Source of the DNA: Octopus sinensis
Taxonomy: Eukaryota
Assembly: GCF_006345805.1 (NCBI RefSeq)
Contig: NC_043010.1
Location: 7,440,001 to 7,504,000, forward strand
Direction: 5' to 3'
DNA: 64,000 bases
The notes beneath the pieces were generated by a model. It had not been told where the DNA came from, made no database searches, and saw only the letters and a program-made list of their open reading frames with translations. Positions 1-24,136 of the stretch are shown here, in pieces. The number at the start of each line of letters is the position of its first letter. The stretch's first letter is position 1. A program made the position numbers and the translations under genes.

Positions 1-17
1 AATCATTGGCATTTATA

Positions 18-550
18 CCTCGTCTGGCTTCCGTGTCGGTGGCACGTAAAAAGCACCAACCATCCATGGCCATTGCTAGCCTACCCTGGCACCTGTGCCA
101 GTGGCACGTAAAAAGCACCATCCGTACATGGCCGATGCCAGCGCCACCTTGACTGGCTTCCGTGTTGGTGGAACGTAAAAACCACCAACCGATCGTGGAC
201 GTTGCAAGCCTCCCCTGGCACCTATGCCAGTGGCACATATAAAAGCACCATCCATACGTGGCCGATGCCAGCGCCGCCCTTGACTGGCTTCCGTGTTGGT
301 GGCACGTAAAAACCACCAATCGATTGTGGCCGTTGCCACCTCCCCTGGTACCTGTGCCGGTGGCACATAAAAAGCACCCACTACACTCATGGAGTGGTTG
401 GTGTTAGGAAGGGCATCCATCTGTAGAAACATTGCCATATCAGACTGGAGCCTGGTGCAGCCTCCTGGCTTCCCAGACCCCAGTTGAACCGTCCAACCCA
501 TGCTAGCAGGGAAAACGGACGTTAAACGATGATGATGATGATGATGATGA
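18..550 (+). mobile_element. Element B: six 61-69-bp modules, conserved 3' core, (GAT)n tail
   Basis: GGTGGCACGTAAAAAGCACC-type motif at 38, 100, 167, 229, 298, 359; core ends CCATGCTAGCA(T/G)GGAAA..GGACGTTAAACGATGATG. Confidence 0.88.
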
Positions 551-1109
551 ATAGGAGTAGGTATAGTTGTATGGTAAGAAGTGAAGTTTGCTTCCCAACC
601 ACATGGTTCTGGGTTCTGGGTTCAGTCCCACTGCATGGCACCATGGGCAAGTGCCTTTTACTATAGTCGCAGGCTGACCAAGACCTTGTGAGTGGATTTG
701 GTAGACAAAAACTGAAAGAAGCCCATCATATGTGTGCATGTGTGCATGTGTGTGTGTGAATGGGTACGTATGTGTCCTTACCTTCGAAACACGCATTGAG
801 TCGAACCAGGGGCAGCTGATGAAGGGGAATTTTCCTTGTGTTGTTTGTCTTGTACTCTGTTTTTTCGTTGTTAAAAAAAGTCCGTTTCCATGTTTGTTTT
901 TACGTTTTCGTTTCCCGTTGAGTTCTACGTCTATTTGTGATGTCCTGTACTCATGTATATATATTTATATATGCATGTATATATACATGTAGATGTATGT
1001 ACGTACATATATGTATGTATGCATATATTTTATTTATTAAATTATTGTATGACTGAGCGCCCTCGCGTCATTTCGTTTTGTTTCTTTCCTTTTCTCCAAG
1101 TAAGTTTTC

Positions 1110-1146
<37 letters not shown>

Positions 1147-1386
1147 ATTATATATATAGTTCAAATTTACAGCAAACAAAGGACAAAGACAGGTGTAGGA
1201 ACAACAAGCAGGTGTAATAGTTTAACACTTGAGAAGAATGGAATACATGGTTTCTAATACATAGAGTTTCATATCTAGCCACAAGCATGTGTATGTTTAT
1301 GCTAAGTTTTTGGAGCGTTTTACATATTTTAACAATATAGTCTTCTAATTTACTTTCTTCTTTCTTGTCAAGAGTGTCCTAATTTC

Positions 1387-1421
<35 letters not shown>

Positions 1422-2590
1422 ACGCATGTGTACATACAGGTATGTGAATGTGTGCACGCATGTTTACATGCAAGTATGTGTGCATGTGTGTGTGTGTGTG
1501 TGCATATGCATGTACGTGTGTGGGCATGGGTATGCATGCATGTGTGTCTGTATACAAAGAATTCTGCACAGTTTTCTGTCTACCAATTTTCACTCACAAA
1601 ACAACTGGTCAGCTGAAGGCTATGGCATAAGACAATTACCAAAGACATAATAACGTAATGGCATCGAAGCCTGCAACCATGTGGTTGTGAAGAGAAACAT
1701 CTTAACCACACAGCCATACCTGCATGTACAAACAAATGGAATTCTAAATAGAATTGTCAAAACATCAAGCATTACAACGACCATCATTATTGGAAGTGTC
1801 TCTTTTCGGTATAACCTTACTAAATAGCACGAACAAAACAGAGTTGACATTGATAAGTCATTAGTGAAACCAGAACCAATTTAGTGGTAACATTATAATG
1901 ATATAGAGAGAAAACTAATACTAGTCAACTCAATGGGAATTGGGCATATGAAAATAGAATAGTGTATTGGAAACGTTGATGTAGAAACGGTTGGAAGTGA
2001 TTAAAAATGGAAAATAAAATTATAGAAATTGCTTCCATCATGAAATTATATTACGTATATTACTCATAAAAATATCAATTACAGAAATCTATTTCATTTT
2101 GAAATGGTTTCCATAGAAAAGATGTGACAATAAGTGTATTACCATTCTTATTATTTGCCAAACTAGAAAGACATTTGAGGCTGTTTAATAAACTTTTAGT
2201 GAGAGATCTCACTCAAACGCAGTCAGAACCGAATTTTGTTTTGTATAAGGTTAACAATATGTTGACGACTTCTTCAGAAAGTAATATTTGATTGCGTTTA
2301 ATAATTCTGTCAAGAAATCTTCAAGAAAATCTATGTCAATAACCACTGAACTAAATATGTACTAAGATTTAATGGTGACTTACACAATGGTATAAGAGTA
2401 TTGCCTTGGAAATGTCTAATGTAAGCAGAGGTATAGGTGTCTGGTTGAGAAATTGGCTTTTGTAATGTTAATGTTACTAGTTTGATTCCACTGGTTAATA
2501 CCTTGGGTAAATGTCTTCTGATGTAACCTCAGGTAGGCCAATAGTTTGTGAGTGGAATTAGGTAAACAGAAAGTGTATGCAGAGGTCTGT

Positions 2591-2640
<50 letters not shown>

Positions 2641-2651
2641 CACACACATTT

Positions 2652-2828
<177 letters not shown>

Positions 2829-4034
2829 CATACATGCATACATACATACATGGTGGCTGCCCCCTCGTTATTGAGTATGGCCATTGCACGAAGCTTAATC
2901 AATGTTGTTATCGAGCAATGCCTGTGCAAGAAGATTTTTTTTAAAGTGAGGAAAAGCTGTGCACTGAGTCAATCCCACTCACTAAGCATCAGCAGCCATA
3001 ATCCGAAAAGAAGAACAAGTCAACATCATCAGTAACTACTGAGCCGCAGGTTTTATGTCGGAGTTATTCCAGTTACCCGAGTTACCTTCTCCTAGAAGGA
3101 TGCCCTAACAAAGGCTAGGAGTCCTTCACTCCCAATGGTTTAACCATGCGATTGGGTATTCAGTCCAATTATTTCTATGTCCCTGCGCAGGATACAGCCC
3201 TAAGACATTTATTGGATGGCCGTTGACTCTCAAGAGTTCCTCCACCCTTACATACATACATCATACATACATACATACATACATACATACATACATACAT
3301 ACATACATACGTACATACATACATACACACATACATACATACATACATACATGCATGCATACATACATACATACATACGTACATGCATATACATACATAT
3401 TTTTTATGGACTTCTACAAAGTTTCTGGTTACCAAATTGTGTGCTAAATAAGGCTAGAGTCAATACAGCAGCAGCATTCCAGCAATGAAAGCAGTAAAAG
3501 ACTAAAAGAATGGTTTTTTTGGTTTTAACAGTGTTGTTGATTACAGAACAACTCATTTTTAAGAAACGAGCAGAAAACTGAATTTGCAACAACAGTTTGT
3601 TGGTTCAGTGTTGTCATTTTTAACTTTCCTTATGTTTACTGTTGTAATTAAGGAAGCAGAATAATCACCAGAGAATCAGAGAATCTATAATACCTGAGGC
3701 AGGTGTAAAACAAAGAAAAAGAAAAGAAAAACTATTTTGCATAGGATCAGAGATAAACATCCTACAAGTGAAGTCAACTACTAATTTTCAATTCTAGAGT
3801 ACATCCATTTCACTAACATCCTCCTCCTCCTCCCCCCCTCCCCCTCTTCCCTCACCTCCTCCTCCTCCTCCTCCTCCTCATCATCATCATCGCTGCAACT
3901 CTCTCACTCTTTCTTCTGTTGGTCTGCTCGCTTAGCCAGCGGGGTGGCATCATTTCAAGGCTAAAACAATGCAAAGCGCATTGTGACCAGCGATGTGTAG
4001 CAACATCTGATAGCCTGGTCGGTCACGTGATATA

Positions 4035-4089
<55 letters not shown>

Positions 4090-5367
4090 GTATATATACA
4101 CACATACACAACAAACCTCTTTCAGTTTCTATCAACAAAATTCACTCTCAAGCCTATGGTCAGTTCTAAGAGTAATGTAGAAGAACTTACTCAAGTGCCA
4201 TGCAGTAGGACTGAACCAAAAACCATGTGGTTGGGGGGCAAATTTCTTAACCACATAACCATGTCTGCACCTTACATTACTAATATTCTTAGAAAATTTC
4301 AACCTGAATTTAGTAAATGAATATGCTGTTTGCGAAGGCCAAATACAATTCATAAAATGAAAATAGTTAAAAATTACAAGAGATTTATTGGCAGTTTCGA
4401 GATTTAGATTAGGATTTAAGATGGTAGAAAAACACAACGAATTATTAATGGAATGCTTGTGTAAATGTAATTGAGAAGAGAGTATGAGAAATCTGTAGTA
4501 GTAAACTTTAAAAATGTATTTTGAAGAGATAACAACAGAAAAGTGCTTCCAACCCCACCTAAGTTTCTTTTTCTTATAACATCCACAAACACACACACAC
4601 ACCACACACACACACACATATGCATGCATATACACACTCCACATGCATGCATATGCACACATACATACATGCACACATACATACATGCACACATACATAC
4701 AGATGCACACACAATGTACTAATGAGAAAATACTTGACTATCAACTAGGAGAGAGTTTGGCAATAACATTGAAGGCATTTTTTTCAACATTTCATATGAG
4801 ATTTTAATGATTTGTGAAAAATAATCACCACAGAGTGCCCATAACCATTTAAAACTAAACTATTTAAGACCCCCAAAAATATGTAAATAAAGGAATGAAA
4901 ATAAAAGAACAGGAAATGAAAGAGATCAGAATATCAGCGAACCCTATCAAAAATGTTTCTTGAAATAATAATCATTTTATGCAATTCATGTCATAAGTGC
5001 AAAAACTCAGCTCCCATATTGGTGGATCCCAACCTTTTCACTATTAAGGATTCCATCTATTTAAATGAATTTTCCCCATGGACTCCAAATGTCAGAAATG
5101 TCTGTCAACTAGATAAGCCAATTTTATTAACAAGAAACTCATTTCCCTAGTTATATGTTTCTGTTGAAAGGCATCTGTAAATGAATAATCATGAGAGATA
5201 AAAAGCTGTTAAGGCTAAAACACTGCAAAATGAAAGGCAAAATTGAAAACAGAACATCGGTTGAATTTCACCTTGCATTTCTTTGATCATTTGGGATTAA
5301 GACTCGTTGTCTAGGTATTCCCTTTTGTATTTCATTTTGCATTGTTTCAGCGATAACAAATTTTTAT

Positions 5368-5733
5368 CCTTGGCCCCGTGCCGGTGGCACGTAAAAGCAC
5401 CATCCGCTCGCATCCATTGCCAGCCTCGCCTGGCCCCCGTGCCGGTGAAACGTAAAAGCACCATCCGTTCGTGTCCGTTGCCAGCCTCGCCTGGCCCCCG
5501 TGCCGGTGGCATGTAAAAAGCACCATCCGTCCATGGCCGTTTGCCAGCTCCGTCTGGCACCTGTGCGGGTGGCACGTAAAAAGCACCCTCTGCACTCACG
5601 GAGTGGTTGGCATTAGGAAGGGCATCCAGCCGTAGAAACACTGCCAGATCAGACTGGGCCTGATGCAGCCTTCTGGCTTCCCAGAATCCAGTTGAACCGT
5701 CCAACCCATGCTAGCATGGAAAGCGGACGCTAA

Positions 5734-5773
<40 letters not shown>
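5368..5773 (+). mobile_element. Element B, four modules
   Basis: Motif at 5383, 5444, 5505, 5568; same core and (GAT)n tail. Confidence 0.88.
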
Positions 5774-6702
5774 CAGAAGTCTTCACTCAGATTAATCTTG
5801 GTTTGTCCACATTATTCTGTAAGGAACATAGGGTTGGTTTTCTGGTTTCTCTGGCATATATATATAGTACTCCCTCGATGGGGCAGGTCTATTGCAGGAT
5901 TACTCCTTTTTACCAGCTGAGTGGACTGGAGCAATGTGAAATGAAGAGTTTTGCTCAAGAACACTATGCATTGCCCGGTCCAGGAATCGAAACCACAAAC
6001 TTACAATCAATCAGGCTACTCTATTCGAATAATCATGTATAACTGAGTTTGTTCATTCATTCGTTTTGCATTTGTTTTTCCATACCAGAATTGGTTTGGA
6101 AGGAGAATTTCACATTTTAAAGCAGGATTTCACAGCTGAATGCTCTTTCTCTCACCAATCTTCCCATGTTTTACAGTCAAGAGAGAAACTATTTTTTTTA
6201 GTTTACAGGCTTTCAAAAACTAAGAACGAGTGATAATAATGTCAAAAAGGGATGCCCACATCAGCATCAGCATCATATCACTCAAGTGATGACAGCTTGG
6301 AATATAAGCATACATGTGCTTTCACACACACACACACACACATTTGTATTTATAGGTTCACAGCAGAATTCCTTCAGTTTCTATCTATCAGATTCCTTCA
6401 CATTACATTAGTCAGCTTGGGCTACAGAAAATACTGAAAGTGTTATGCAGTGGGATTGAACCTGAAACCACAAGGGTGTGAAGTAAACTTCTTAGCCGCA
6501 CAGTCATGCCTACACCTATATACATTTTACGCTGTAGCATTTTAAAGTTTTTTTTTATCACTGCTCCCGATTTTGCAGTACAATCTTTGTTTTGAACCAA
6601 AAAGCCCTCAGTGGGACTTAAGTTGAAACTATATGATTGTGAAATGAACCCCTTGACCACAATGCCATGAGTGCACTTATCCACTGTATACTGTTGCATT
6701 TT

Positions 6703-7227
6703 TGGCATCTGTGCTAGCGTGGTGCAAAGAGCACCATACGAGTGTAATCGTTGACAGAGCAGCTAACCGGCTTTCGTGTCAGTGGTACTTAAAAGGCACC
6801 ATTCGAGTGTGATCATTATTAGCGTCGCCTTACTGGCGCTTGTGCCCATGCTAGTAGGGTGCCAAGAACACCATCTGAGTGTGACCATTGTCAGAGCGGC
6901 TAACTGGCTTCCGTGCCAGTGGCACGTAAAAGGGCACCGTTCGAGCGTGATTGCTACCAGCGTCGCCGGTGGCATGTGTAAAAAGATTTGAGCGAGGTTA
7001 TTGCCAGTACCACCTGACTGGCCCCCATGCTGGTGGCACATAAAAAGCACCCACTACACTCTCGGAGTGGTTGGCGTTAGGAAGGGCATCCAGCCTGTAG
7101 AAACTCTGCCAGATCAAGATTGGAGCCTGGTGCAGCCATCTGGTTCGCAAGCCCTCAGTCAAAATCGTCCAACCCATGCTAGCATTGAAAGCGGATGTTA
7201 AACGATGATGATGATGATGATGATGAT
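6703..7227 (+). mobile_element. Element B, variant module set
   Basis: Divergent modules, same 3' core and (GAT)n tail; closest to 21681-22072. Confidence 0.85.
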
Positions 7228-7967
7228 GGTGTCACAGCTCAAAGACCCCCAGTACTAACTTTGAGGATCCCAGGTTGGAAACTACTGCTCTGGAATATGA
7301 CAATGCTTGCACCATTAGAGAAAATGATACTGAGATGATTATATATAACACTTACTGATTCAGTCAAGGCTAGACTGAGTAACAGTATGGTAACATTAAT
7401 ATACTAATGCTGGAGGAACTTTTAAATACAACTTGTTGATTAACATTTTCTTTTATATTTAAACTACAGCCTGTTTATTGAATAATCTGTAAATCCTGTC
7501 ACTCTGTAGGACTGTAAAAATCAGCATAATAAAAATATATTCAATTGTATTTAAATTTATGAACAAAACTATAAAATCGAAATATGAAAAAAATATTTCA
7601 TGGCCATATTAATGTATTGCAATACAAGAAAGCAATATTTATTATTATTTAAACATTTATGACTATGAATGTCCTTTGATTCAATATTTTATGGTATTGG
7701 CAAGACTTAATACTATATAGTATGATTCAGTGGCATGTGCTATGCTTTCACTTGTCTAAGGTGTCTCTGTAGTCATGAGCTGGTATATATTTCCACTCTT
7801 GACTCAATGGAACGTTGAGGATGTGACAGCAGCAGGGTGAGAGGGTTGCATTAGAATTCAACTAGGATTCATTTTCAGCTAAAAATACTCAAATAATATA
7901 AAATTAAGGGCCTTGTTCAAGGATACAATGTAACACCTGATCCAGGAATAAATAAATAAATGTAAAT

Positions 7968-8360
7968 AAGTGCTCCCTTTTAAAGCCTAGCCAGGCTTAT
8001 GGGCCCGATTTCCTGGTTTCAATGTTGTATGTGTTCCCCAGCTGGATGGGACCCCAGTCCAACTCAGCGTTACTCATTTTTGCCGGCTGAGTGGACTGAA
8101 GCAACGTGAAATGAAGTGTTTTGCTCAAGAACACAACACATCGCCCGGTCCAGGAATCGAAACCACAATCTTACGATCGTATTTGTTCCTCAGCTGGACT
8201 GGATGCCAGTCCATTGCAGCGTTACTCGTTTTTGCCAGCTGAGTGGACTGGAGCAACATGAAATGACATGTTTTGCTCAAGAACATAACGCGTCGCCCGG
8301 TCCAGGAATCGAAACCACAATCTTATGATCATGATGCTGACACCTTAACCACTAAGCCTG
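7968..8360 (-). mobile_element. SINE family D (tRNA head plus CORE-like domain) with internal duplication of about 150 bp
   Basis: Minus strand TGGCTTAGTGG-like A box remnant, GGTTTCGATTCC B box, GTGTTCTTGAGCAAAACACTTCATTTCACGTTGCT. Other copies about 5835-6015, 28885-28992, 29780-30000, 42860-43010. CORE assignment is from recalled similarity. Confidence 0.8.
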
Positions 8361-9052
8361 AAAGCCCAACACTTTAATTACTAGGCTACACACCAGTCTC
8401 TTAGTATTTAAACATAGTAGTAATAAAAAAAAACAAAAAAAAACGTAGTAGTGAAAATAGTGTATTTGATATAGTCTTCTCCATTATTTTCATTGTTGAA
8501 CAAATTTCTTGATCTACTGTAAACTATTGTCTAGAAATAGAGAAATCTGTAGTTGGCATTGAACAGTCACTACACAATTAAAAATAAAAGGCCCCCAACA
8601 CATCTGAGTGCACTATCTCCAACTAGGCAGACTTGAATTGATTTAAAACTGACACAGTAGGGAATATGAGAGAAAATTGAATTAGCCATGCTTATCCTTT
8701 TTCAATGTCCTTCAAACCTTGACTAGAAATAAAATTGAAAAAAAAAACAATAAATAAATAAATTTAAAAAATAAAATAAAATAAAATATATAAAATTAGA
8801 TATAAAATCAATAAATAAAAATATTAAATAAATGAATCAAAAACTTCTCCTTATTAACTGACTAATTAGCTTCAAATAACATCAGATTTCAAGATAGACC
8901 TTGTTAGAATAGGGAAGGAAACTTTTGGCTGCAGGCATCTCCACAAAAAGTAAATAAAATAAATGAATAAAAACAAACTAAACAAGCCAACTTATATAGC
9001 TACCATTAATTTCTATGGCAACCAATCAGAGCAATTATTCTCTGGTACATAC

Positions 9053-9197
9053 CTGGCAACTCTTCCTTGCGTCCGCTGCCATCATCACCCCATCCACTTC
9101 CACTGTCAATTCCTGACAGCGTGGATGTTTCACTGTAGCGATATGGGATGTGAACCGCTGCCTCATCAAGTTTCTTATGACCTGGTATCTTAGTTGC
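9053..9197 (-). CDS. Putative downstream cytoplasmic-tail exon of the protocadherin (ATKIPGHKKLDEAAVHIPYRYSETSTLSGIDSGSGWGDDGSGRKEELP)
   Basis: 145-nt unique, non-repeat segment. Acceptor AAG|GCA is the first AG after a long pyrimidine tract; donor CAG|GTATGT. Phase-0 start matches the large-exon donor. S/G/D-rich peptide with a DSGxG-W motif. Exact acceptor uncertain. Confidence 0.7.
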
Positions 9198-9718
9198 CTT
9201 TCAGATACACGGTTGTGCATCGCAAAGTTGAAAGACCAAAGCCGAAAGGAGAAAAAGCTAGTTATTATAATTTGATTTAATGAAACAAATATACAATAGC
9301 AAAAAATAAAATAAATAAATAAAAATTGATAATGATAATTTGGGGGGAAAAAAATAACATTTCTTAATTAGGCCTAAAGCCTTAGATTATTCATATAATA
9401 CCACCACACCATTTGGCTCAGGAACATCACATGTAAAGTGCTATAAGCTTCTAATAAAGTAATCTTTTTGCTTTTATTCTTTGCTTTTCATTTGCCAATT
9501 TTTGTAAGAATTGATTAGTTTAATACGACAGATGTGTGGTTAAGATGTTTGGTTTGCAATCATGTGGTTCTGGGTTTGATATCCTACTTCATAGCATGTT
9601 GAGCCGAGTGTATATATTCTATCAAACCATAGCCTTGGGTTGACCACCTGACCGATACCTCGTGAGTGAAATTTGGACGATTAAATATGTTTGGTAACTA
9701 GTCATATAAATATGTACC

Positions 9719-9749
<31 letters not shown>

Positions 9750-9815
9750 ATACAGACAGGTAGGCAGACAGACAGACAGACAGATAGATAGATAGATAGA
9801 TAGATAGACAGACAA

Positions 9816-9880
<65 letters not shown>

Positions 9881-9891
9881 CAGACAGACAA

Positions 9892-9933
<42 letters not shown>

Positions 9934-9997
9934 GATAGATAGATAGATAGATAGATAGATAGAGATAGATAGATAGATAGATATAGATAGATAGATA

Positions 9998-10045
<48 letters not shown>

Positions 10046-10071
10046 TAGATAGATAGATAGGTAGATTGATA

Positions 10072-10105
<34 letters not shown>

Positions 10106-10132
10106 CTGACTGATTGATTGATTGATAGATAT

Positions 10133-10169
<37 letters not shown>

Positions 10170-10185
10170 ATATAGATAGATAGAC

Positions 10186-10216
<31 letters not shown>

Positions 10217-10227
10217 CAGACAGACAA

Positions 10228-10284
<57 letters not shown>

Positions 10285-10301
10285 AGATAGGTAGATTGAT
10301 A

Positions 10302-10335
<34 letters not shown>

Positions 10336-10362
10336 CTGACTGATTGATTGATTGATAGATAT

Positions 10363-10415
<53 letters not shown>

Positions 10416-10436
10416 CAGATAGATAGATAGATAGAC
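9750..10436. repeat. Compound (AGAT)n/(ATTG)n/(AGAC)n microsatellite
   Basis: Direct reading; internal 230-bp period. Confidence 0.95.
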
Positions 10437-10917
10437 ACACTCACATATACATACATAGACAGACATGTATTTATGTGTGTGTAGCTAAAGGATATGGACA
10501 TCAATAAATCAGTAGTTTAAACAAAAGAATCAGGTAATATTTGTTTTACTTAAGTCATAAGAGTTTCTCTGCAGCCAACTTTGATGCAGGAAATGCAATG
10601 AGTCAGTGATTGACCTGTGGGGAGCCTGTAAGCGATGTTACTATACTTCACAAATGTGTTGTATAGAATGAACATTAGCATAAAATATTAGTCTTAAATG
10701 TAGATTTCCTTTGTTAGGTGCTGTGGTTAAGAAGCTTGCTCTCTAACCATGTCATCTTAGGTTCAGTTCCATGCATGGCACTTTGGGGCAAATGTTGCCT
10801 TCTACTATAGCTCTGAAATAACCAAAGCCTGGTGAGTGGAAACTGAAAGAAGCCCTGTGTGTGTGTGTGTACCTTTGTTCTAACATCACATGGTGGTTGT
10901 AAAAGAGCATTCCTTAA

Positions 10918-11332
10918 ATCTTTATTGTCCACAAGGGGCTAAACATAGAGGGAACAAACAAGGACAGACAAAGGGATTAAGTCAATTATATCGACCCCAG
11001 TGCATAAGTGGTACTTAATTTATCGACCCCAAAAGGATGAAAGGCAAAGTCGCCCTCGGCGGAATTTGAACTCAGAATGTAATGGCAGACGAAATACCTA
11101 TTTTTTTACTACCCACAAGGGGCTAAACACAGAGAGGACAAACAAGGACAGACAAACGGGTTAAGTTGATCATATCGACCCCCCAGTGAGTAACTGGTAC
11201 TTATTTAATCGATCCTGAAAGGATGAAACACAAAGACGACCTCGGCGGAATTTGAACTCAGAATGTAACCGTAGACGAAATACCGCTAACCATTTCGCCC
11301 GGCGTGCTAAAGTTTCTGCCAACTCGCCACCT
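10918..11332 (-). mobile_element. SINE family C head-to-tail dimer
   Basis: Two copies; the left one lacks its 5' end and joins at GAAATACCTA (about 11091-11100). Confidence 0.88.
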
Positions 11333-12029
11333 TACTGCCTTACAACTAATGTTCATTTCCATCCCTCTGCCTTGAGAAATATTACATTATTTTGGAAACA
11401 GGTGAGAGTTGGTGACAGGAAAGGCATCTAGTTGTAGAAAATCTTCCTCAACAAATTCTGTTTGACACATGTAAGCATGAAAAAGTGAGCTTTAAATGAC
11501 GGTGATAACTACAAGCATTATACTTGTGTTTCCTACAAATTTAAGGAAAAGAAATCAAAATTAACCTCAGAGCATGGAAAGCGGACGTTAAACGATGATG
11601 ATGATGATTAACCCCTTGGAAACACTAATTAATGTTTGAGCTTGTCATCTAGGTTGTAGAAAATCATGAATAATGGGATATTATTCATTATTAGTCTACT
11701 CCCTGGATCTTCTGCCAGTTGTAGGGGTAGAAACCTCAGGCAACGGTATCAGGGTGTATATAAGTCTTGAAAAAATTACAAAAATCGATTCCAGGTGAGA
11801 ATGCGATCAATAAAGCCATGGGAACGTGCATTTGTACGTGCAAGTACATCAGCTGTTGCGATCGATACTACGTGTTCGCAAGAAAAATGCACATGCAGTC
11901 TGTGCAAAAAAAGCCAGGCTGGCTTGAAGTAATGCCACAAAATGGGACAATCGGACAAGTTGTTTTGAGAAAATTTGGTTTAAATGTTAGACAACTCAGC
12001 ACCATCCATTGGACAGGGGGCGTTTTGCT

Positions 12030-12236
12030 CATCCTTCAAAACTTCCATGCTTCCTGAGATTCGCCAACACTACACCTGATTTTCTCCCCTCCATACACAT
12101 GCAAGCATGTATCTGACTCATACATTGTTCGCTTTCCAGACTTTTCTACATTACTGCATGTACTTTATATGCACTTTCTGACAAGTTGTGGTGCACCTGA
12201 GCACTGTATACAATAATTTCATTATTATTATTATTA
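12030..12236 (+). mobile_element. CR1-like LINE 3'UTR fragment
   Basis: CTTCAAAACTTCCATGCTTCCTGAG...CACCTGAGCACTGTATACAATAATTTC(ATT)n. Another split copy at 25830-26365. Confidence 0.85.
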
Positions 12237-12665
12237 TATATATATATTTGTGTGTGTGTGCGTGAGTATATATCTATGTGTGTGTCTTTGTGTCAATGTT
12301 TGTCCCCCCCTGTCATCACTTGACAACTGGTGTTAGTGTGTTTACATCCCCATAACTCAGTTTGGCAAAAGAGACAATAGAATAAATATTAGACTGAAAA
12401 AATAAGTCCTGGGGTCTCTATGTTTGACTAAAACCTTCCAAGGTAGTGATCCAGCATGGCCACAGTCAAATGAATGAAACAAGTAAAAGAATAAAAGAAT
12501 AAGCAAATAGATCAATAAATAATGTCAGGACTAAAGTGATTTTGATGACAGACCTCTTTGATCAAGACTGACCGAAGGTTGAATGATAATAATGATGGAG
12601 AGAGCTCCTATGTAGTCATTCAAGCTGCTTGAAACAGCAGCCAAATCTTTCCCAGATCACATCCT

Positions 12666-12861
12666 ATCATCATCATCATCATCATCATCATCGTTTAACG
12701 TCCGTTTTCCGCGCTAGCACGGGTTGGATGGTCGACCGGGGTCTAGGAAGCCAGGGGCTGCACCAGGCTCCAGTCTGATCTGGCAGAGTTTCTACAGCTG
12801 GATGCCCTTCCTAACGCCAACCACTCCATGAGTGTAGTGGGTGCTTTTTACATGCCACCTG
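12666..12861 (-). mobile_element. Element B, 3' core only
   Basis: (CAT)n-CGTTTAACGTCCG...TTTTTACATGCCACC. Shorter B fragments at 11568-11608, 20770-20880, 47678-47780. Confidence 0.85.
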
Positions 12862-13116
12862 TCTTGAAAAAGGAAAAGGACTGTTGATTATGTAGTTATA
12901 CACATAAATCTATAGAGACTGGTTGGTTTTTAGCTAGAATGCTTTTGGTCAAGGTCTGCTAAACACTAGCATGGGTAACCAAGTTGGACTCCCTGATAAA
13001 GTAGGTAAAAATATTACAGCACCACAAGGTATGTGAAAGGTAATTGAATAAAGAAGGTTGTTTTCATTGAGATGTGTGTATTAGAAAATTTACTGTTCCA
13101 CACACACAATCAGACA

Positions 13117-13545
13117 TACTCTTTACTCTTTACTCTTTACTCTTTTACTTGTTTCAGTCATTTAACTGCAGCCATGCTGGAGCACCGCCTTTAGTCGAGC
13201 AAATCGACCCCGGGACTTATTCTTTGTAAGTCCAGTACTTATTCTATCGGTCTCTTTTGCCGAACCGCTAAGTGATGGGGATGTAAACACACCAGCATCG
13301 GTTGTCAAGCAATGCTAGGGGGACAAACACACACACACAAACACACACACATACACACATATATATATATATACATATATACGACAGGCTTCTTTCAGTT
13401 TCCGTCTACCAAATCCACTCACAAGGCATTGGTCGGCCTGGAGCTATAGCAGAAGACACTTGCCCAAGATGCCACGCAGTGGGACTGAACCCGGAACCAT
13501 GTGGTTGGTTAGCAAGCTACTTACCACACAGCCACTCCTGCGCCT
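13117..13545 (-). mobile_element. SINE family A (tRNA-like head, central microsatellite, tail ending (AAGAGTA)n)
   Basis: A box TGGCTGTGTGG, B box GGTTCAGTCCC; high identity to the other A copies. Confidence 0.9.
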
Positions 13546-15193
13546 ATACATATACAAACACATACATACACATACACACAAACACAGACACACATTCAAC
13601 TATTTCAATCGCTTATAGAATTGCGTTTCCTGTAATTCTCTTTTCTTGTTTTTCTTTTACATTGTGATGATCCCCTGGTACACAGTGTGTCAGACTCACC
13701 CTGTAATTGGCACTGGTGATAAACAACTCCAACTATAATAACAGCAACAGCAACAACAAAAACAACAATAACAAAGTAAATTCAGAGAAGAATAATTATA
13801 AGAACCATTGTAAATAATAAGGAAAGGAAAAAAAAAATAGAGCAACAGGGAAACAAAATGACAAAAAGCCCCCAAAAAACAAAGGAACTGATAATATGAT
13901 ATGGTTCTCTCTGAGGATCACTCCAGAATAAATCTTAAACTTGTCATATTTAATTATAGAACTGAAAACTCAAGTAAGAGAGAAAGAAATTCCAAACTTG
14001 TCAACTTTAATTATAGAACCAGAGAATCAAAACCAGAGGAGGCAGGTATAATACATGTAATCAGAACTTTTCTCTTCACACACAAGCTGTGTGTGATAAA
14101 TATGAATCTATCTGAGAATGTATTGCACCATGTTCTGTTGGCTTGACCTATCCTTCCTAAATCTGGATTTTGTGCATGCATAAATACAAATCATACGCAA
14201 GTAGTATTCCCTGGAAGATCCAAATACAAAAATATTCAAATGCATTGAAAAAAAAAAACCTTATATGTTTAAGCTAAAGTGCTCGCAGACGATCCATAAT
14301 GTCAACATGATCTCAGATGCGTAGCTATATATGGACAAAGAAATGGTAAAATTTATCCTTTACTATTATAAGGAATGACTATATTTGTATTTAAGTCGAA
14401 TAGAGACTTACGTAAACATAAATATTAATAGAAATATAAAAATAAAACAAGAGGATTTTTTTTCCCCGTATATTGAAAATAAATAAAACTGTTTTGAAAT
14501 ATAGCATGTCTTGAAGTGGAAATGAAGATGTAAAATTAACCCTTTTGTGGCCATAATTCTAACAAAAATATAGTTCCTTTGCATAGTAATTTTCAAAATA
14601 GCCAACGTTAACATTAAATTTAATATGAACGACAAATGTTTACATATTGAATATTATCTAGCATTATTTTTTTTTTTGTAAAAATAATGTGATTTCAATC
14701 CGAGAAGAATTTAAATTTGAATTTGAATATAGTTTGGGGCAAGTTGATCTGAACTGATATGAAAACAAGCACTTCAGATACTGGAATGCTGTGGCTGTTA
14801 AAACGATGCATACAACAAACAATTCTATGTTGGGAGAGAGTGTATATATTTCGGAAAAATTAATTTATATGCAAAATAAAGGAGGCAAACAAGCATTAAA
14901 AAATCAAATATAACAATTTTTATATGAACTTTTCTATCCTTTTGCTTTTTTTTCATTGTTCTTTATTTTCTGTTACTAATTTCAGTTATTGAGTATAGCC
15001 TTGCTTCAGCATAGTTCTGTACCGTTCACAAGGGTTTTAGTCTTCTATATCCTGTACTTATATCAGCATTCTTCAACAAAATAAGATAGGAAATTGACAT
15101 TTATGTGAGTGTGAAGGGAGATAACTTAAACGAGCATTAATACTGCAGTGTATTTCTGTTTGAATGTGCCAGTTGTTATTCCAAACTGATACA

Positions 15194-15236
<43 letters not shown>

Positions 15237-15278
15237 CATCCATCCATCAACCTATCTCTCTCTCTCTATCTATCTATC

Positions 15279-15325
<47 letters not shown>

Positions 15326-15713
15326 ATCTATCTACCCATCTATCTACCTATCTTATCTATCTATCTATCTATCTCTATCTATCTATCTACTCTATTTCTC
15401 TTCTCTTCTTTTTGTTCCTTTTCCTTTTTTTCTTCCCCTTTCTACGATCCTTTTGATTGAAAACCTACCCCACTTTTTTTTTCTTCTTGTTTTTTGTTTT
15501 TTGTTTTTTTCATCCCCCAAAGAAGCTCTACCTTGTAACTTGTCCCATCTGTGGCAGCCTGTGTGGCCAATAAGAAACTTATATATATCTATATATATAT
15601 ATATATATTTATCTATCTATCTATCTATCTATCTTCTATCATCATCTATCTACCTACCTACCTATCTACCTACCTATCTATCTATCTTCTAGCTATCTAT
15701 CTATCTATCTACT

Positions 15714-15767
<54 letters not shown>

Positions 15768-15801
15768 ATCTATCTATCTACCTACCTACCTATCTACCTA
15801 C

Positions 15802-15878
<77 letters not shown>

Positions 15879-16149
15879 CATCCATCCATCGATCTATCTA
15901 TCTCTCGATCTGTCTCTTTTTTCTTTTCTTTAAGTTTCTTTTCTTTTTTTTCTTTTTTTTCTTTTTTCCCTTTTACGATCCCTTTTGATCGAAAACTTAC
16001 ACCCTTTTCTTTTTCATCCCCAAAAAGAAAAGCTCTACCTTGTAATTTGTCCCATCTGTGTGCGGCCCTGTGTGGCTAATAAAGAAACTTATCTATCTAT
16101 CCATCCATCGGTCTATCTCTCTCTCGATCTATCTACCTATCTATTTTTA

Positions 16150-16213
<64 letters not shown>

Positions 16214-16265
16214 CATCCATCAATCTACCTATCTCTCTCTCTATCTATCTATCTATCTATTAATC
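15194..16265. repeat. (TATC)n arrays with a duplicated unique spacer
   Basis: Direct reading. Confidence 0.95.
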
Positions 16266-16664
16266 GATTTATATACATAGAGAGAGAGAGAGAGGGAGGA
16301 AGATAGAAAGAAAGAGGGAGCGAATGATGGAGATTCAGTGCCTATTATCTAGATTTTTAATCACGTGCTATTGATGCGTTTGAGTCAATGAAAGAAGACA
16401 CTAAATTTACCATGTGAGTGGGATTGAACAGCAACCACATGGTTGGGGAACAAAGTCCTTTACTACCTAGCATCCAGTGGCAGACATCATTAATAGAGTC
16501 ATAAACAATCAATGTGTGCATGCATATGTATGTATGTATGTATGTATACATGTATGTATGTATGCATGCATGTATGTATTGGTGCATGTATGTATGTATG
16601 TATGTATGTGTGTATGTATGTATGTATGTATGTATGCATGTATGCATGCATGCATGTATGTATG

Positions 16665-17247
16665 TACTCTTTTACTTGTTTCAGTCATTTGACTGCGGCC
16701 ATGCTGGAGCACCGCCTTTAGTCGAGCAAATCAACCCCAGGACTTATTCTTTGTAAGCCTAGTACTTATTCTATCGGTATGTTTTGCCGAACTGCTAAGT
16801 TACGGAGACGTAAACACACCAGCATCGGTTGTCAAGCGATGTTGAGGGGGACAAACACTGATACACAAACATACACACACATGTAAATATATATATATAT
16901 CGTTATTTTCTACCTTTTTTGCCATATACAGCTTACAAATTCTATTTGTTTGTGGAGACTTTTTATTAGTAGAGGAAATAGTGATCAATTTTGGCTGCTA
17001 TTTCTAATATTTTCGGTATGTGGTTTTGAGCAACTTGTTGCAATTAACCCTTAATTATAATTATATATATATATACATATATACGACGGGCTTCTTTCAG
17101 TTTCCGTCTACCAGATCCACTCACAAGGGCTTTGGTTGGCCCGAGGCTAAAGTAGAAGACACTTGCCCAAGGTGCCATGCAGTGGGACTGAACCCAGAAC
17201 CATGTGTTTGATAAGCAAGCTACTTACCACACAGCCACTTCTGCATC
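16665..17247 (-). mobile_element. SINE family A with about 160-bp insertion in its central microsatellite
   Basis: Tail 16665-16885, unrelated segment about 16901-17063, head 17080-17247. Confidence 0.85.
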
Positions 17248-17275
17248 TATATATTTATGTTTGCATGTACATATG

Positions 17276-17419
17276 TACAAGAGGTGCTCAAAAGTCCCTT
17301 GCTTTAAGGGTACTGCAAAAGGCCTGGCCAGAGGCCCAACCTTCCAAGTTCTTTTACAGGGCTTAGAAAAACTAAAGGACCACTGCAATGAGTGTGTGAA
17401 TCTGAGAGGGGAATGTTGA
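17276..17419 (+). mobile_element. Left half of a mariner-type MITE
   Basis: Homologous to the first about 130 bp of the 61579 copy; stops at GAATGTTGA. Confidence 0.8.
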
Positions 17420-17724
17420 CTTTCGGAAACATTTTTTAATGCTAAGAGTTGCTGAAGCATGGAACAAACTGCCGGCATCAGTTGCATCCTTCAAAACTTC
17501 CATGCTTCCTGAGATTCACCAACACTACACCTGATTTTCTCCCCTCCATACACACGCAAGCATGTATCTGATTCATACACTGCTCGCTTCCCAGATATTT
17601 GTACATTACTGCATATAATTTATATGCACTTTTTACAAGTTGTGATGCACCTGAGCACTGTATACAATAATTTCATTATTATTATTATATTATTATTATT
17701 ATTATCATTATTATTATTATTATT
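17420..17724 (+). mobile_element. CR1-like LINE 3' end
   Basis: Homologous to 18529-18990, opposite orientation, (ATT)n tail. Confidence 0.88.
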
Positions 17725-18316
17725 AAATGCAGAAGATGATATGGTCAAAATGTTGCTAGTTGTTTCAGTAGTTTGGGAAATAGAATAGGAAGCAGACGGA
17801 CCTGGAAGAATTTTTGGGAAGACTTTGGGCCAGAATAATTGAAAGTCAGTGTTATTAGTGAGCAGATGCGTGAAGAATGAAAAAATGAGGATGGAGCATA
17901 TTTATAGTCAGAAATTACCTTTCAGAATGGACTTTCAATAAAAAATATTGTCTGGACTGCAAAATGGACTTTGAGGTAGGGGTTGAAAGATCTGTGTAGG
18001 GGTTTTCTTTGTAAGAAGTTGATACGAATAAATATTACATATTTAATTCCTTGAATGGGTGAATGAATGAATGAAAGAATGAATGAATGAAAGAATGTAT
18101 GAAAGAATAAAAAGGATGAATGATATTGCTGGAATGTTGAGATTGCTTGAAATCTGATACAAAATGATTAGACAATAAGACTGTAAAGATAAACAGAATA
18201 ATATTTGAACTATAAATGATGATTGGTTAAGGTGTAGGATTTCACAGATAACGAGTGTTTATAGAGGCATCTTAATAAGATATCTTTAAACATATCTTTA
18301 AACATACATACATACA

Positions 18317-18357
<41 letters not shown>

Positions 18358-18463
18358 TGCATACATACATGCATACCTGCATACATACGTACATACATAC
18401 ATACATACATACATACATACATACATACATACATACATACATGCATAAATATACACTCATACA

Positions 18464-18530
18464 TATGAGGGAGTGCTGAAAAGTTCCTAGTGTTGGATAA
18501 AAGAAAATACAGGAGTATCATTTAATCATA
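18464..18530 (-). mobile_element. Right end of a mariner-type MITE, inverted
   Basis: Reverse complement matches the last about 65 bp of the 61579 copy. Confidence 0.75.
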
Positions 18531-18545
18531 ATAATGATAATAATG

Positions 18546-18577
<32 letters not shown>

Positions 18578-18990
18578 CATAATAATAATAATGAAATTAT
18601 TGTATACAGTGCTCAGGTGCATCACAACTTGTCAAAAGTGCATATAAAGCACATGTAGTAATGTACAAATGTCTGGAAAGTGAACAGTGTATGAGTCAGA
18701 TACATGCTTGCGTGTGTATAATCAGGTGTAGTGTTGGCAAATCTCGGGAAGCATGAAAGTTTTGAAGGATGCTGTGCTCCGAAAACTAACAACTGATGCC
18801 AGCAGTTTGTTCCATGCTTCAGCAACTCTTAATGTGAAAAAATGTTTCCGAAAGTCATGGGAGCTGTGCTGCTTTCTGACTTTGTAAACACGTCCACAGG
18901 TGTTAGACAGGTGGAGTTTGAAAAGGTGCTCAGAGTTATTGTTTGTAAGGTGGTTAGTAATTTTATGGGTGTCTGCCAAGTCAGCTGCCA
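18529..18990 (-). mobile_element. CR1-like LINE 3' end
   Basis: Encodes RKQHSSHDFRKHFFTLRVAEAWNKL (CR1 ORF2 C-terminal pattern), then 3'UTR and (ATT)n tail. Confidence 0.88.
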
Positions 18991-19047
18991 GACGTTATTA
19001 TTTCATTATATCACTCACCTAATTTAATCTGAATAAATTATGAATTT

Positions 19048-20545
19048 GCCTTTGATATCAATGAAGCTTTTGGCCAGCCCAATATGGGATCCATCCCTCT
19101 CACATCTCTTGGATTATCAGCTTCCTTCCAGGCAATGCATTTTCAGACTATGCTGATGATGCTATTTCTGGCCCACATATTATCATCTCGGGTGAGCCCC
19201 AGGGTTCAAGTCTGATTCCCATGCTCTTCTTCCTATATATCTGATGAAGTTGATGTTGTTAACATTTTGGTTGTAGAAAAGTCATGCAGACAGAGGGGAT
19301 TCTGAACGACCGATATTCTGGAGAGGGAAAATTAAAAGTAGAGGTTAGTTGCAGAGCTTGTGATGGTAGACACATCATTGGTGATGAGAGGTGGAAAGAT
19401 AAGTGAGTCAAGAGTGGTTGATTGGAGGTGACGTATAACCAGTTATCTCTTCAGAGCATAGGCCATTGTAGTAGTGTTAGTTGAGGCAAAAGGAGGACAC
19501 AGTTTATTTGTGGAGAAGGGACTGGAGTATGACTGCTAGTTACTTTATACCATATTCTATATCTGAAAGCTGTGCTCTGCTGTGAGTCTCACTCGAACTT
19601 TGCAAAGGATTAGTAATAGAAGGGTACTGAATTATCTGAATTATCTGCATCTGAAGTAAAGGATCAGCTTTTGGGAAGAGGTTTTAGGTATTTGTATGAT
19701 GGACATATAATAAATAATGACCTACATGCAGTCACTTCCTGCAGAACCCACTTTTCAACAGATGATACCACCCTTCATTCTTCCTTAAATTTCCCTGTTC
19801 AAGTTTTATCCGTTTGTAACCTTGAAACCTCATGATGCATCTGCACTGTCTTTATGAAGAGAAACAAACACCCATGGGGGTTATGCTGCTCTTCTCCCCT
19901 GTAGGTTAAAAAAAGAAAAGAAAAAGGCTCAACTTGCATCAAGAAACCATTATTACAGTTACCACAATGGGGGCCTGCAACTAGTGACCTCCAAATGCTA
20001 TGTCTCATTGTCTTTGAGGATTTATCAATTTATCATATGCCCATCATACAAATACCTAAAACTGCTTCCCAAAAGCTGATCCTTTACTTCAGATGCAGAT
20101 AATTCAGTACCCTTCTAATACTAATCCTTTGCAAAGTTTGAATGAGACTCACAGCAGAGCACAGCTTTCAGATATGGATTATGGTCTAAAGTCACTCTCA
20201 GTCACACTCCAATCCCTTCTCCACAAATAAACTGTGTCCTCCTTTTGCCTCTACTAACACTACTACAATGGCCTCTGCTCTGAAGAGATAACAGGTTATA
20301 TGTCACCTCCAATCAAGTACTCTTAACTCACTTATCTTTCTACCTTTCATCACCAATGATGCGTCTACCATCACAGGCCCTGCAACTAACCTCTACTTTT
20401 AATTTTCTCTCTCTAGAATATCGGTCGTTCAGAATCCCCTCTGTCTGCATGACTTTTCTGCAACCAAAACGTTAACAACATCAACTTCATCAGTTTCATA
20501 GGGGCTGTAAAAGCCATGTCCTCTGCCCTTCGTCCAGACCTAGCT
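19048..20545 (+). pseudogene. Degenerate, rearranged LINE ORF2 (RT) relic
   Basis: AFDINEAFG (19048), SGEPQGSSLIPMLFFLY (19188-19238), NDLHAVTSCRTHFSTDDTTLHSS (19716-19784) correspond to LDISKAFD, GVPQGS and YADD motifs; interrupted by an inverted 475-bp copy of 20025-20493. Confidence 0.72.
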
Positions 20546-20551
20546 TTCCTC

Positions 20552-20758: not shown

Positions 20759-20791
<33 letters not shown>

Positions 20792-20798
20792 TCATCAT
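20552..20798. repeat. Compound triplet tract (CCT/CAT/CGT/CAC)
   Basis: Direct reading. Confidence 0.95.

Positions 20799-24104: not shown

Positions 24105-24136
<32 letters not shown>

What the first reader, a model, noticed from the sequence alone, without database searches (positions are those of the whole stretch)
9053..9197. Distal exon that completes the protocadherin tail, not shown in the ORF track
Seen: unique, CpG-retaining island in repeat-rich DNA with pyrimidine tract, first AG at 9199-9198 and donor CAG|GTATGT. A TGA two codons upstream closes the frame, so the exon must start at or after 9197. Phase 0 joins the large exon cleanly: ...EGMHQ|ATKIPGHKKLDEAAVHIPYRYSETSTLSGIDSGSGWGDDGSGRKEELP. 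Recalled, unverified: ST..DSG.GW motifs occur in coleoid protocadherin tails. Inference: the gene spans at least 49 kb, and a further phase-1 exon lies beyond 9053.
Basis: partly seen in the sequence, partly recalled or inferred. Interest (0 to 1): 0.85.

Follow-up and report, generated by a model that had tools for sequence, protein, structure and literature searches.

The report
Annotated second exon of octopus protocadherin

Summary
The observation and the interpretation both hold. The window is identical to Octopus sinensis chromosome CM016872.1:7,440,001-7,504,000.

On the minus strand, a 2,427-nt first coding exon (58105-55679) encodes the protocadherin ectodomain and transmembrane segment. 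Joined in phase 0 to 9197-9053, it gives 857 residues identical to the first 857 of RefSeq XP_029644494.1 (948 aa).

The same three-coding-exon layout is annotated in O. bimaculoides and Argonauta hians.

Against Argonauta, the exon is the only sizeable alignable island in its neighbourhood. It keeps both splice sites and the 3n+1 length, and it has dN/dS of about 0.14.

Its peptide carries a tail motif shared by more than 40 octopod paralogues: S.MST.SS..DSG.GW...HYEELPG.

Annotated isoform X2 (817 aa) skips this exon, which shifts the frame to ALRLVDLE*.

Weaker points are the "CpG island", which is not remarkable, and the pyrimidine tract, which lies distal to the acceptor. The splice signals alone do not exceed chance.

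No transcript reads could be examined here.

The exon is already known, so interest is low.

The parts
55679..58105 (-). Coding exon 1 (2,427 nt, 809 codons from ATG MMTLFG... to ...TTEGMHQ). It encodes the signal peptide, the cadherin repeats, the transmembrane segment and the proximal cytoplasmic region.
   Evidence: Pfam Cadherin E=2.1e-72 with 5 stretches, and Cadherin_2. Identical to residues 1-809 of XP_029644494.1. tblastn of P0001 maps to 58105-55667.
55673..55678 (-). Donor of intron 1, CAG|GTAGGT, phase 0.
   Evidence: Read directly. Paralogue ORFs called on genomic contigs read through the same position as ...[HY]Q|VS.
9198..55678 (-). Intron 1, 46,481 nt, rich in repeats (microsatellites, SINE-like copies, a LINE reverse-transcriptase ORF).
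   Evidence: Length. Collinear with the O. bimaculoides intron. RVT_1 ORF at 50636-52177.
9360..9403 (-). Single-copy conserved intronic 44-mer, 163-206 nt upstream of the exon-2 acceptor. A possible splicing regulator (inference only).
   Evidence: 100% identical in O. bimaculoides. 93% over 41 nt in A. hians, where it lies about 1.3 kb upstream of exon 2. One copy per locus.
9198..9259 (-). Acceptor region of exon 2: a distal pyrimidine tract, a 58-nt AG-free zone and the acceptor AG at 9199-9198.
   Evidence: The acceptor context ctgaaag|GCAAC is the same in A. hians.
9053..9197 (-). Coding exon 2 (the finding): 145 nt, enters in phase 0, leaves in phase 1. It encodes ATKIPGHKKLDEAAVHIPYRYSETSTLSGIDSGSGWGDDGSGRKEELP plus the first base of a Gly codon.
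   Evidence: Residues 810-857 of XP_029644494.1 and XP_014774848.1. Conserved island against A. hians, dN/dS 0.14. Family tail motif.
9047..9052 (-). Donor of intron 2, CAG|GTATGT, phase 1.
   Evidence: The same CCAG|gtatgtaccag is found in A. hians. Many paralogue exon-2 ORFs read through as ...PG|M, that is G|GTATG.
1..9052 (-). First 9,052 nt of intron 2 (33,848 nt in all). Exon 3 is not in the window.
   Evidence: No tblastn match for residues 860-948 in the window. Exon 3 is at L002 92902-93176, which is 24,797 nt beyond window position 1.

Best explanation
Window 9197-9053 (minus strand) is coding exon 2 of a three-coding-exon protocadherin gene of Octopus sinensis. Its product is RefSeq XP_029644494.1, named 'putative protocadherin beta-18 isoform X1'.

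Shown:
- The pre-mRNA would be spliced from the donor after ...EGMHQ (55679) across a 46.5-kb intron to the acceptor at 9197.
- It would then be spliced from 9053 across a 33.8-kb intron to a last exon outside the window.
- The exon supplies 48 residues of the cytoplasmic tail. These include the octopod-protocadherin tail motif (PYRYSE-S-TLSGIDSGSGW...EELPG).
- It sets the reading frame for the 91-residue C-terminus, which ends in the conserved NSFTTYSKPLPAIP motif.
- The exon is 3n+1 long. Leaving it out joins exon 1 to exon 3 out of frame and ends the protein after eight residues (ALRLVDLE*). This is exactly the annotated 817-aa isoform X2.

Inferred:
- The exon behaves as a cassette whose inclusion decides between a tail-bearing and an almost tail-less protocadherin.
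- The tail motif is a docking or phosphorylation site.
For: 1. Identity to annotation. Exon 1 plus exon 2 from the window is identical to residues 1-857 of P0122 (XP_029644494.1) at 857/857. It differs at 4 exon-1 residues from O. bimaculoides XP_014774848.1. The window equals L002 4106-68105 base for base.

2. Reconstruction. Exon 1 + exon 2 + exon 3 from genomic DNA gives the 948-aa protein. Exon 1 + exon 3 gives the 817-aa isoform (and for O. bimaculoides).

3. Same layout in three genomes. O. bimaculoides exons are at L001 10001-12427, 46291-46435 and 75266-75541. A. hians exons start near L003 2001, 19814 and 27097.

4. Deep conservation. Within 3 kb around the exon, the only sizeable match to the A. 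hians locus is window 9205-9042. Both splice sites are kept. The length is 154 nt against 145 nt, both 3n+1, and the indels are in-frame. 36 of 51 aligned amino-acid positions are identical. dS is about 1.04, dN 0.14 and dN/dS 0.14.

5. O. bimaculoides exon. 143/145 bases are identical, and both differences are synonymous.

6. Family homology. 45 octopod tails align over the exon, with consensus ...P....E.STxxSxxDSGxGWxE...HYEELPG and the exon-1 end at ...[HY]Q. A profile of the exon-2 peptides found 28 representatives among 1.84 billion proteins. All that carry a name are octopod protocadherins or their tail fragments.

7. Literature. Cephalopod protocadherins are multi-exonic genes with private final exons (PMC9068888; PMC6339937).
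Against: - No RNA reads or transcript contigs for this gene could be examined. Searches of the protein collection found no transcript-derived fragment spanning the junction.
- RefSeq and other models are predictions, and models of this gene family are sometimes wrong: fused or split models were seen.
- The proximal pyrimidine tract of the acceptor is weak.
- The O. sinensis versus O. bimaculoides comparison cannot show selection. The flanking intron is as conserved as the exon, 97-98%.
- The only O. vulgaris model in the 90% cluster is the exon-skipping form.
Confidence: 0.95

Rival explanations
1. The exon is real, but exons 2 and 3 form a separate small transcription unit (a tail-only gene). 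Joining them to the 46-kb-distant ectodomain exon would then be an artefact of homology-guided gene modelling.
For: Tail exons of several paralogues are annotated on their own as 'uncharacterized' or 'hypothetical' proteins. Examples are A0A0L8H751 (162 aa), XP_036355490.1 (182 aa) and several A. hians entries.
Against: Those orphan entries look like split models of the same family. Exon 2 here has no in-frame start codon before the motif and is closed by TGA two codons upstream. The phases match exon 1 exactly. The same join is modelled in three species from separate genome records. Logan contigs of about 3.2 kb encode 1,001-aa paralogues with ectodomain and exon-2 motif in one ORF, which points to spliced mRNA in relatives.
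Confidence: 0.02
2. The exon is a decaying relic that is modelled but is hardly ever included. The main product of the gene would be the exon-skipping 817-aa isoform.
For: Isoform X2/X3 (817 aa, ALRLVDLE*) is annotated in O. sinensis, O. bimaculoides and O. vulgaris, and it is the only O. vulgaris model in the cluster. The acceptor has a weak proximal pyrimidine tract. This gene has lost the family's conserved Tyr, reading RKEELPG where paralogues read HYEELPG.
Against: dN/dS is 0.14 over a synonymous distance near saturation. The indels are in-frame and both splice sites are conserved between Octopus and Argonauta. This is not what an unused exon would show. The downstream 91-residue frame with the conserved NSFTTYSKPLPAIP end can be read only if exon 2 is included.
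Confidence: 0.03

Closest known systems
RefSeq gene model for O. sinensis XP_029644494.1 (putative protocadherin beta-18 isoform X1), with orthologues XP_014774848.1 (O. bimaculoides) and GAB1603898.1 (A. hians)
   Same: It is this very gene. The window is base-identical to CM016872.1:7,440,001-7,504,000, and exon 1 plus exon 2 give residues 1-857 exactly.
   Different: Nothing differs. The finding re-derives an annotated exon from raw sequence.
Octopod/coleoid expanded protocadherin family (168 multi-exonic genes in O. bimaculoides; Albertin et al. 2015 as cited in PMC6339937; PMC9068888)
   Same: One large exon for six cadherin repeats plus the transmembrane segment, followed by private small 3' exons. 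The exon-1 donor sits after a conserved ...[HY]Q. The exon-2 peptide carries the S.MST.SS..DSG.GW...YEELPG motif and ends in phase 1 at ...PG.
   Different: This gene has Lys in place of the family's nearly constant Tyr (RKEELPG against HYEELPG), in Octopus and in Argonauta alike. The tail motif is not among the octopus motifs listed in Styfhals et al. 2019, Table S2.
Vertebrate non-clustered (delta) protocadherin genes
   Same: The gene works the same way: a very large first coding exon, a few small cytoplasmic exons separated by very long introns, and long and short tail isoforms by alternative splicing. This comparison rests on my own knowledge of the family and was not tested here.
   Different: No sequence relationship of the tail was found. 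No Pfam family hits it at E<=10, and the exon-2 profile found only octopod proteins. Published searches found no CM1-CM3 motifs in octopus protocadherins (PMC6339937).
Vertebrate clustered protocadherins (alpha/gamma: variable exons spliced to shared constant exons)
   Same: A variable ectodomain exon is spliced over tens of kilobases to distal tail exons.
   Different: The tail exons here are private to one gene. The exact exon-2 core occurs only in the orthologues among 125 relatives, and paralogue tails are divergent. The literature states that cephalopods do not use shared final exons (PMC9068888).

Membership tests
Octopod expanded protocadherin gene (multi-exonic, private tail exons) | Large first coding exon encoding signal peptide, cadherin repeats and transmembrane segment | tested here: met
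   Pfam Cadherin E=2.1e-72 (5-6 stretches) and Cadherin_2. Hydrophobic segment [27 protein letters not shown].
Octopod expanded protocadherin gene (multi-exonic, private tail exons) | Exon-1 donor at the conserved ...[HY]Q position, phase 0 | tested here: met
   CAG|GTAGGT after EGMHQ. Aligned paralogues end the homologous block in HQ/YQ, and read-through ORFs continue as 'VS'.
Octopod expanded protocadherin gene (multi-exonic, private tail exons) | Second exon encoding the S.MST..S..DSG.GW...YEELPG tail block and ending in phase 1 | tested here: met
   Alignments of 45 and 26 tails. Profile search gave 28 hits, all named ones octopod. Paralogue genomic ORFs end ...PG|M, that is G|GTATG. One deviation: Tyr is replaced by Lys in this gene.
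Octopod expanded protocadherin gene (multi-exonic, private tail exons) | Exons joined in the mature mRNA | not testable with these tools
   Only gene models support the join: XP_029644494.1, XP_014774848.1 and GAB1603898.1. No reads were available, and no transcript-derived fragment of this gene was found.
Vertebrate-type clustered protocadherin locus | Tail (constant) exons shared by several variable exons | tested here: not met
   The exact exon-2 core occurs only in P0001 and P0122 among 125 relatives. Paralogues have their own divergent tails. There is only one cadherin ORF in the 64-kb window. PMC9068888 states the same.
Vertebrate-type clustered protocadherin locus | Cytoplasmic Pfam domains of clustered protocadherins (Cadherin_C_2, Cadherin_tail) | tested here: not met
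   hmmscan of the 230-aa cytoplasmic region at E<=10 returned only a chance DUF919 hit.
Vertebrate delta-protocadherins | Conserved cytoplasmic motifs CM1/CM2(/CM3) | tested here: not met
   No Pfam hit on the tail. The exon-2 profile finds no proteins outside octopods at E<=0.001. Styfhals et al. 2019 also found none.

The most novel reading that the evidence does not exclude
Exon 2 may be a regulated, frame-shifting cassette exon. Including it gives the full 948-aa protocadherin with the docking motifs. Skipping it gives an 817-aa protein with almost no distal tail. Because the new stop lies in the last exon, that mRNA would escape nonsense-mediated decay.

The following observations are compatible with this switch being used in octopod neurons, possibly across the whole gene family:
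- the weak proximal pyrimidine tract;
- the long AG-free zone;
- the 44-nt intronic element conserved to Argonauta;
- the 3n+1 length, which is also conserved;
- the many annotated short isoforms of paralogues that end just after the exon-1 boundary.
Probability: 0.25. Interest if true: 0.4.

Novelty: already known. Interest (0 to 1): 0.1.

Why it matters
As a discovery it matters little. The exon and its junctions are already in RefSeq models of three octopods, and the multi-exon layout of cephalopod protocadherins is published.

It is useful as a calibration result. A reader working from sequence alone correctly found a 145-nt exon 46 kb from its partner and correctly predicted a further exon in phase 1.

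Three side results have modest value:
- the exon-2 tail motif is octopod-restricted at the sensitivity used here, and it is absent from the published motif list that I could read;
- skipping this exon explains the annotated truncated isoform;
- tail exons of several paralogues are mis-annotated as orphan genes.

Tried and rejected
1. **Short-query protein search.** A 152-aa query (end of exon 1 plus exon 2) returned nothing, even though exact matches exist in the collection. This is a limit of the word index, not evidence of absence.

2. **Search for transcript fragments.** A 385-aa C-terminal query, meant to catch transcript-derived fragments of this gene, returned only paralogues at 58% identity or less. 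No transcript evidence was obtained.

3. **Pfam on the cytoplasmic tail.** No family was found.

4. **Rfam and tRNA scans of the window.** Nothing was found.

5. **Signals-only scan for exons.** It gave 14 decoys, and the true exon failed its proximal-pyrimidine filter. I therefore rejected splice signals as evidence on their own.

6. **O. sinensis versus O. bimaculoides comparison.** It is uninformative about selection, because the flanks are 97-98% identical, about the same as the exon. I replaced it with the Argonauta comparison.

7. **Another reading frame.** The 61-aa ATG ORF at 9035-9220 (minus strand) lies in a different frame from the exon's. I did not search this ORF for relatives; I set it aside because it is the exon's own frame that matches the annotated proteins and their relatives.

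8. **Shared constant exon as in vertebrates.** Rejected.

9. **Albertin et al. 2015.** The paper could not be opened under the id I tried.

Full report
**What is at the coordinates.** Read on the minus strand, the segment shows the following:
- a pyrimidine-rich stretch;
- a 58-nt zone without AG;
- the acceptor ctgaaAG|GCAACT, with the AG at 9199-9198;
- an in-frame TGA at 9203-9201;
- an open stretch of 48 codons plus one base (9197-9053);
- the donor CAG|GTATGT.

The AG-free zone was measured. The translation is ATKIPGHKKLDEAAVHIPYRYSETSTLSGIDSGSGWGDDGSGRKEELP.

The only large cadherin ORF of the window is 55652-58138 on the minus strand, with Pfam Cadherin E=2.1e-72. It ends its coding part at ...TTEGMHQ with the donor CAG|GTAGGT at 55679|55678. 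Its length from the first base of the ORF is a multiple of three, so the join to 9197 is in phase 0.

The segment is single-copy in the window. No listed ORF is in its frame. It lies between microsatellite and AT-rich tandem arrays.

- The pyrimidine tract is distal: 75% Y at -60..-21 but 50% Y at -20..-3.
- The CpG content is unremarkable: 5 CpGs, obs/exp 0.57 against 0.44 for the window, and 13.7% of equal-sized windows have as many.
- Splice signals plus an open frame are not above chance. A simple scan gave 14 decoys and missed the real exon.

**Identity of the gene.** I searched with a composite protein made of exon 1 plus the candidate exon. The best hit was a 948-aa protein at 100% identity and 100% query coverage: P0001, O. 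bimaculoides XP_014774848.1, named 'putative protocadherin beta-18 isoform X1'.

Its 90% cluster also holds several other entries:
- O. sinensis XP_029644494.1 (P0122, 948 aa);
- A. hians GAB1603898.1 (P0121, 944 aa);
- three 817-aa isoforms from O. sinensis, O. bimaculoides and O. vulgaris.

The composite from the window is identical to residues 1-857 of P0122 at 857/857. It differs from P0001 at four exon-1 residues.

The genomic locus of P0122 is L002, in GCA_006345805.1, CM016872.1. It contains the reverse complement of the whole window without a single mismatch, at L002 4106-68105. The window is therefore CM016872.1:7,440,001-7,504,000.

**Gene structure.** In O. sinensis there are three coding exons:

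| Coding exon | Position | Size |
|---|---|---|
| 1 | window 58105-55679 | 2,427 nt |
| 2 | window 9197-9053 | 145 nt |
| 3 | L002 92902-93176 | 91 codons plus stop |

- Intron 1 is 46,481 nt and intron 2 is 33,848 nt. The CDS spans 83,176 bp.
- Exon 3 starts 24,797 nt beyond window position 1. It has a strong acceptor, ttttgttttctacag|GCCTTAAG.
- Residues 860-948 have no match in the window.
- Exon 2 leaves in phase 1: its last G plus GC of exon 3 gives Gly, followed by LKTCRPG...

O. bimaculoides has the same layout, with exons at L001 10001-12427, 46291-46435 and 75266-75541. So does A. hians, in a much more compact 25-kb gene (L003).

**Is the exon under coding constraint?** Against O. bimaculoides the exon is 143/145 identical, and both changes are synonymous. 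The flanking intron is 97-98% identical too, so this pair says little.

Argonauta is informative:
- Within about 3 kb around the exon, the only sizeable match to the orthologous locus is window 9205-9042 against L003 19806-19978. That is the exon plus a few bases on each side.
- Both splice-site contexts are kept: ctgaaag|GCAAC and CCAG|gtatgtaccag.
- The exon is 154 nt against 145 nt. Both lengths are 3n+1, and the indels are of one and two codons.
- 36 of 51 aligned amino-acid positions are identical.
- Nei-Gojobori counts give dS about 1.04, dN 0.14 and dN/dS 0.14.

Across the whole window, the collinear single-copy matches to the Argonauta locus are few:
- the upstream region;
- exon 1;
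- exon 2;
- a 44-mer in intron 1;
- a 101-nt element in intron 2.

Everything else that matches is interspersed repeat.

**What the peptide is.** Forty-five octopod protocadherin tails align across the exon (26 of them as alignment A1). The homologous block starts right after a conserved ...[HY]Q, which is the end of exon 1. It reads roughly ...P....E[ML]ST[ML]SS..DSG.G[WC].E...HYE[ET]LPG and stops at the Gly that is split by intron 2.

The recalled 'ST..DSG.GW' motif is thus real in octopods.

This gene and its Argonauta orthologue have RKEELPG/RKEEIPG where almost all paralogues have a Tyr.

A profile of A1 was searched against 1.84 billion representatives and found only 28 proteins at E<=0.001. 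All those that carry a name are octopod protocadherins or tail fragments. They fall into two groups:
- Many are genomic ORFs that read through the donor as ...PG|M, that is G|GTATG. This shows that the exon-2 donor is conserved among paralogues.
- Others join exon-2-like and exon-3-like sequence in one ORF.

No Pfam family matches the tail at E<=10. Styfhals et al. 2019 report no vertebrate CM1-CM3 motifs in octopus protocadherins, and their table of octopus motifs lists none in the distal tail (PMC6339937).

What the motif does is inference only. It is Ser/Thr-rich and acidic, and in paralogues it carries a YEEL-type tyrosine. A phosphorylation or docking site is therefore the most likely role.

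**Alternative use.** The 817-aa isoforms end ...EGMHQALRLVDLE. That sequence is exon 3 read in the frame that results when exon 1 is joined to it directly (for O. bimaculoides; for O. sinensis). Isoform X2 is therefore the exon-2-skipping product.

The new stop lies in the last exon, so by the usual rule such an mRNA would not be degraded. This last point is inference.

The weak proximal pyrimidine tract fits an exon that can be skipped. Many annotated paralogue isoforms also stop a few residues after the exon-1 boundary.

Whether skipping is regulated or is noise cannot be decided here.

**Comparison with known systems.**
- The gene belongs to the expanded octopod protocadherin family. Its members are described as multi-exonic genes that arose by whole-gene duplication and do not share final exons (PMC9068888; PMC6339937).
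- It works like vertebrate delta-protocadherin genes: one huge exon, small distal tail exons and tail isoforms. This comparison is from my own knowledge and was not tested. There is no detectable sequence relationship in the tail.
- It is not a vertebrate-type cluster with constant exons. The exact exon-2 core occurs only in the orthologues among 125 relatives.

**Limits.** No RNA reads could be examined. Two attempts to find transcript-derived protein fragments of this gene failed. One search shows that the word index misses exact matches for short queries. Support for splicing therefore rests on three species' gene models, on frame and phase logic, and on strong comparative evidence.

**Verdict.** The feature is an ordinary, already annotated exon, so interest is low at 0.1. 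The most novel reading still open is that this is a conserved frame-shifting cassette exon that toggles the protocadherin tail. I put its probability at about 0.25, and it would be of moderate interest if true.

Noticed in passing
window 9360-9403 (minus strand): Single-copy 44-nt intronic element about 165-205 nt upstream of the exon-2 acceptor. It is 100% conserved in O. bimaculoides and 93% over 41 nt in Argonauta hians, where it lies about 1.3 kb upstream of exon 2. It could be a splicing regulatory element.
   Followed up: partly
window 2038-2138 (minus strand), intron 2: Single-copy 101-nt element, 100% identical in O. bimaculoides and 82% in A. hians (L003 23329-23433), collinear with the gene. 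Stops occur in all three forward frames, so it is a conserved non-coding element and not a missed exon.
   Followed up: partly
window 50636-52177 (minus strand), within 49650-52313: A 513-aa reverse-transcriptase ORF (Pfam RVT_1, E=2.7e-31) lies in intron 1, in the same orientation as the gene. The surrounding 2.7 kb corresponds to only 642 bp without Ns in O. bimaculoides (L001 14029-14671). This looks like a lineage-specific LINE insertion and contributes to the longer intron (46.5 kb against about 33.9 kb).
   Followed up: partly
window ~40116-40519, 33536-33931, 21151-21573, 12235-12502, 559-758; and ~29320-29747, 25924-26341, 25223-25621, 16654-17277, 13136-13574: Two families of roughly 400-bp interspersed repeats (SINE-like), each with many copies in both introns. 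They also occur in the O. bimaculoides and Argonauta loci, in both orientations. No tRNA or Rfam match was found.
   Followed up: no
window 9766-10435; also 23351-24617, 27670-28419, 55560-55650: Long microsatellite arrays: (AGAT) about 170 copies just upstream of exon 2, similar TA/CA-type arrays elsewhere, and a (TA)n run immediately after the exon-1 donor. They generate most of the long spurious ORFs in the ORF list.
   Followed up: no
window 35591-38140 (plus-strand ORFs): ORFs of 154 and 271 aa contain a repeated peptide (…[15 protein letters not shown]…; …YVPPTQ..DEAG.RPR.DG.CYVPTAR…). This suggests tandem or nested copies of one repeat unit. GC is 46%, the highest in the window. Related sequence recurs at window 85-385.
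   Followed up: no
relatives: P0152 (A0A0L8H751), P0132 (XP_036355490.1), P0136/P0137/P0147/P0151 (A. hians); P0157 (XP_029644520.2, 6653 aa), P0153 (CAI9732433.1, 1785 aa): Tail exons (exon-2-like plus exon-3-like) of several paralogues are annotated as separate 'uncharacterized' or 'hypothetical' proteins. Other models fuse several protocadherin genes into one giant protein. The long introns evidently mislead annotation in this cluster.
   Followed up: partly
exon 2, window 9057-9071 (RKEEL), and paralogue alignment: This gene and its Argonauta orthologue have Lys where more than 40 paralogues have the Tyr of HYEELPG/HYETLPG. If that Tyr is a phosphorylation or docking site, this protocadherin lacks it.
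   Followed up: partly
exon 3 (outside the window; L002 92902-93176): The C-terminal NSFTTYSKPLPAIP motif recurs widely among long paralogues: KPLP in 34 and NSF..Y/F in 28 of 50 proteins of 880 aa or more. It is a second octopod tail motif and is reachable only when exon 2 is included.
   Followed up: partly
window 58202-58433 (upstream of the ATG): Three short blocks just upstream of the start codon are conserved with the A. hians locus (up to 92% over 64 nt). They are candidate 5'UTR or promoter elements.
   Followed up: no
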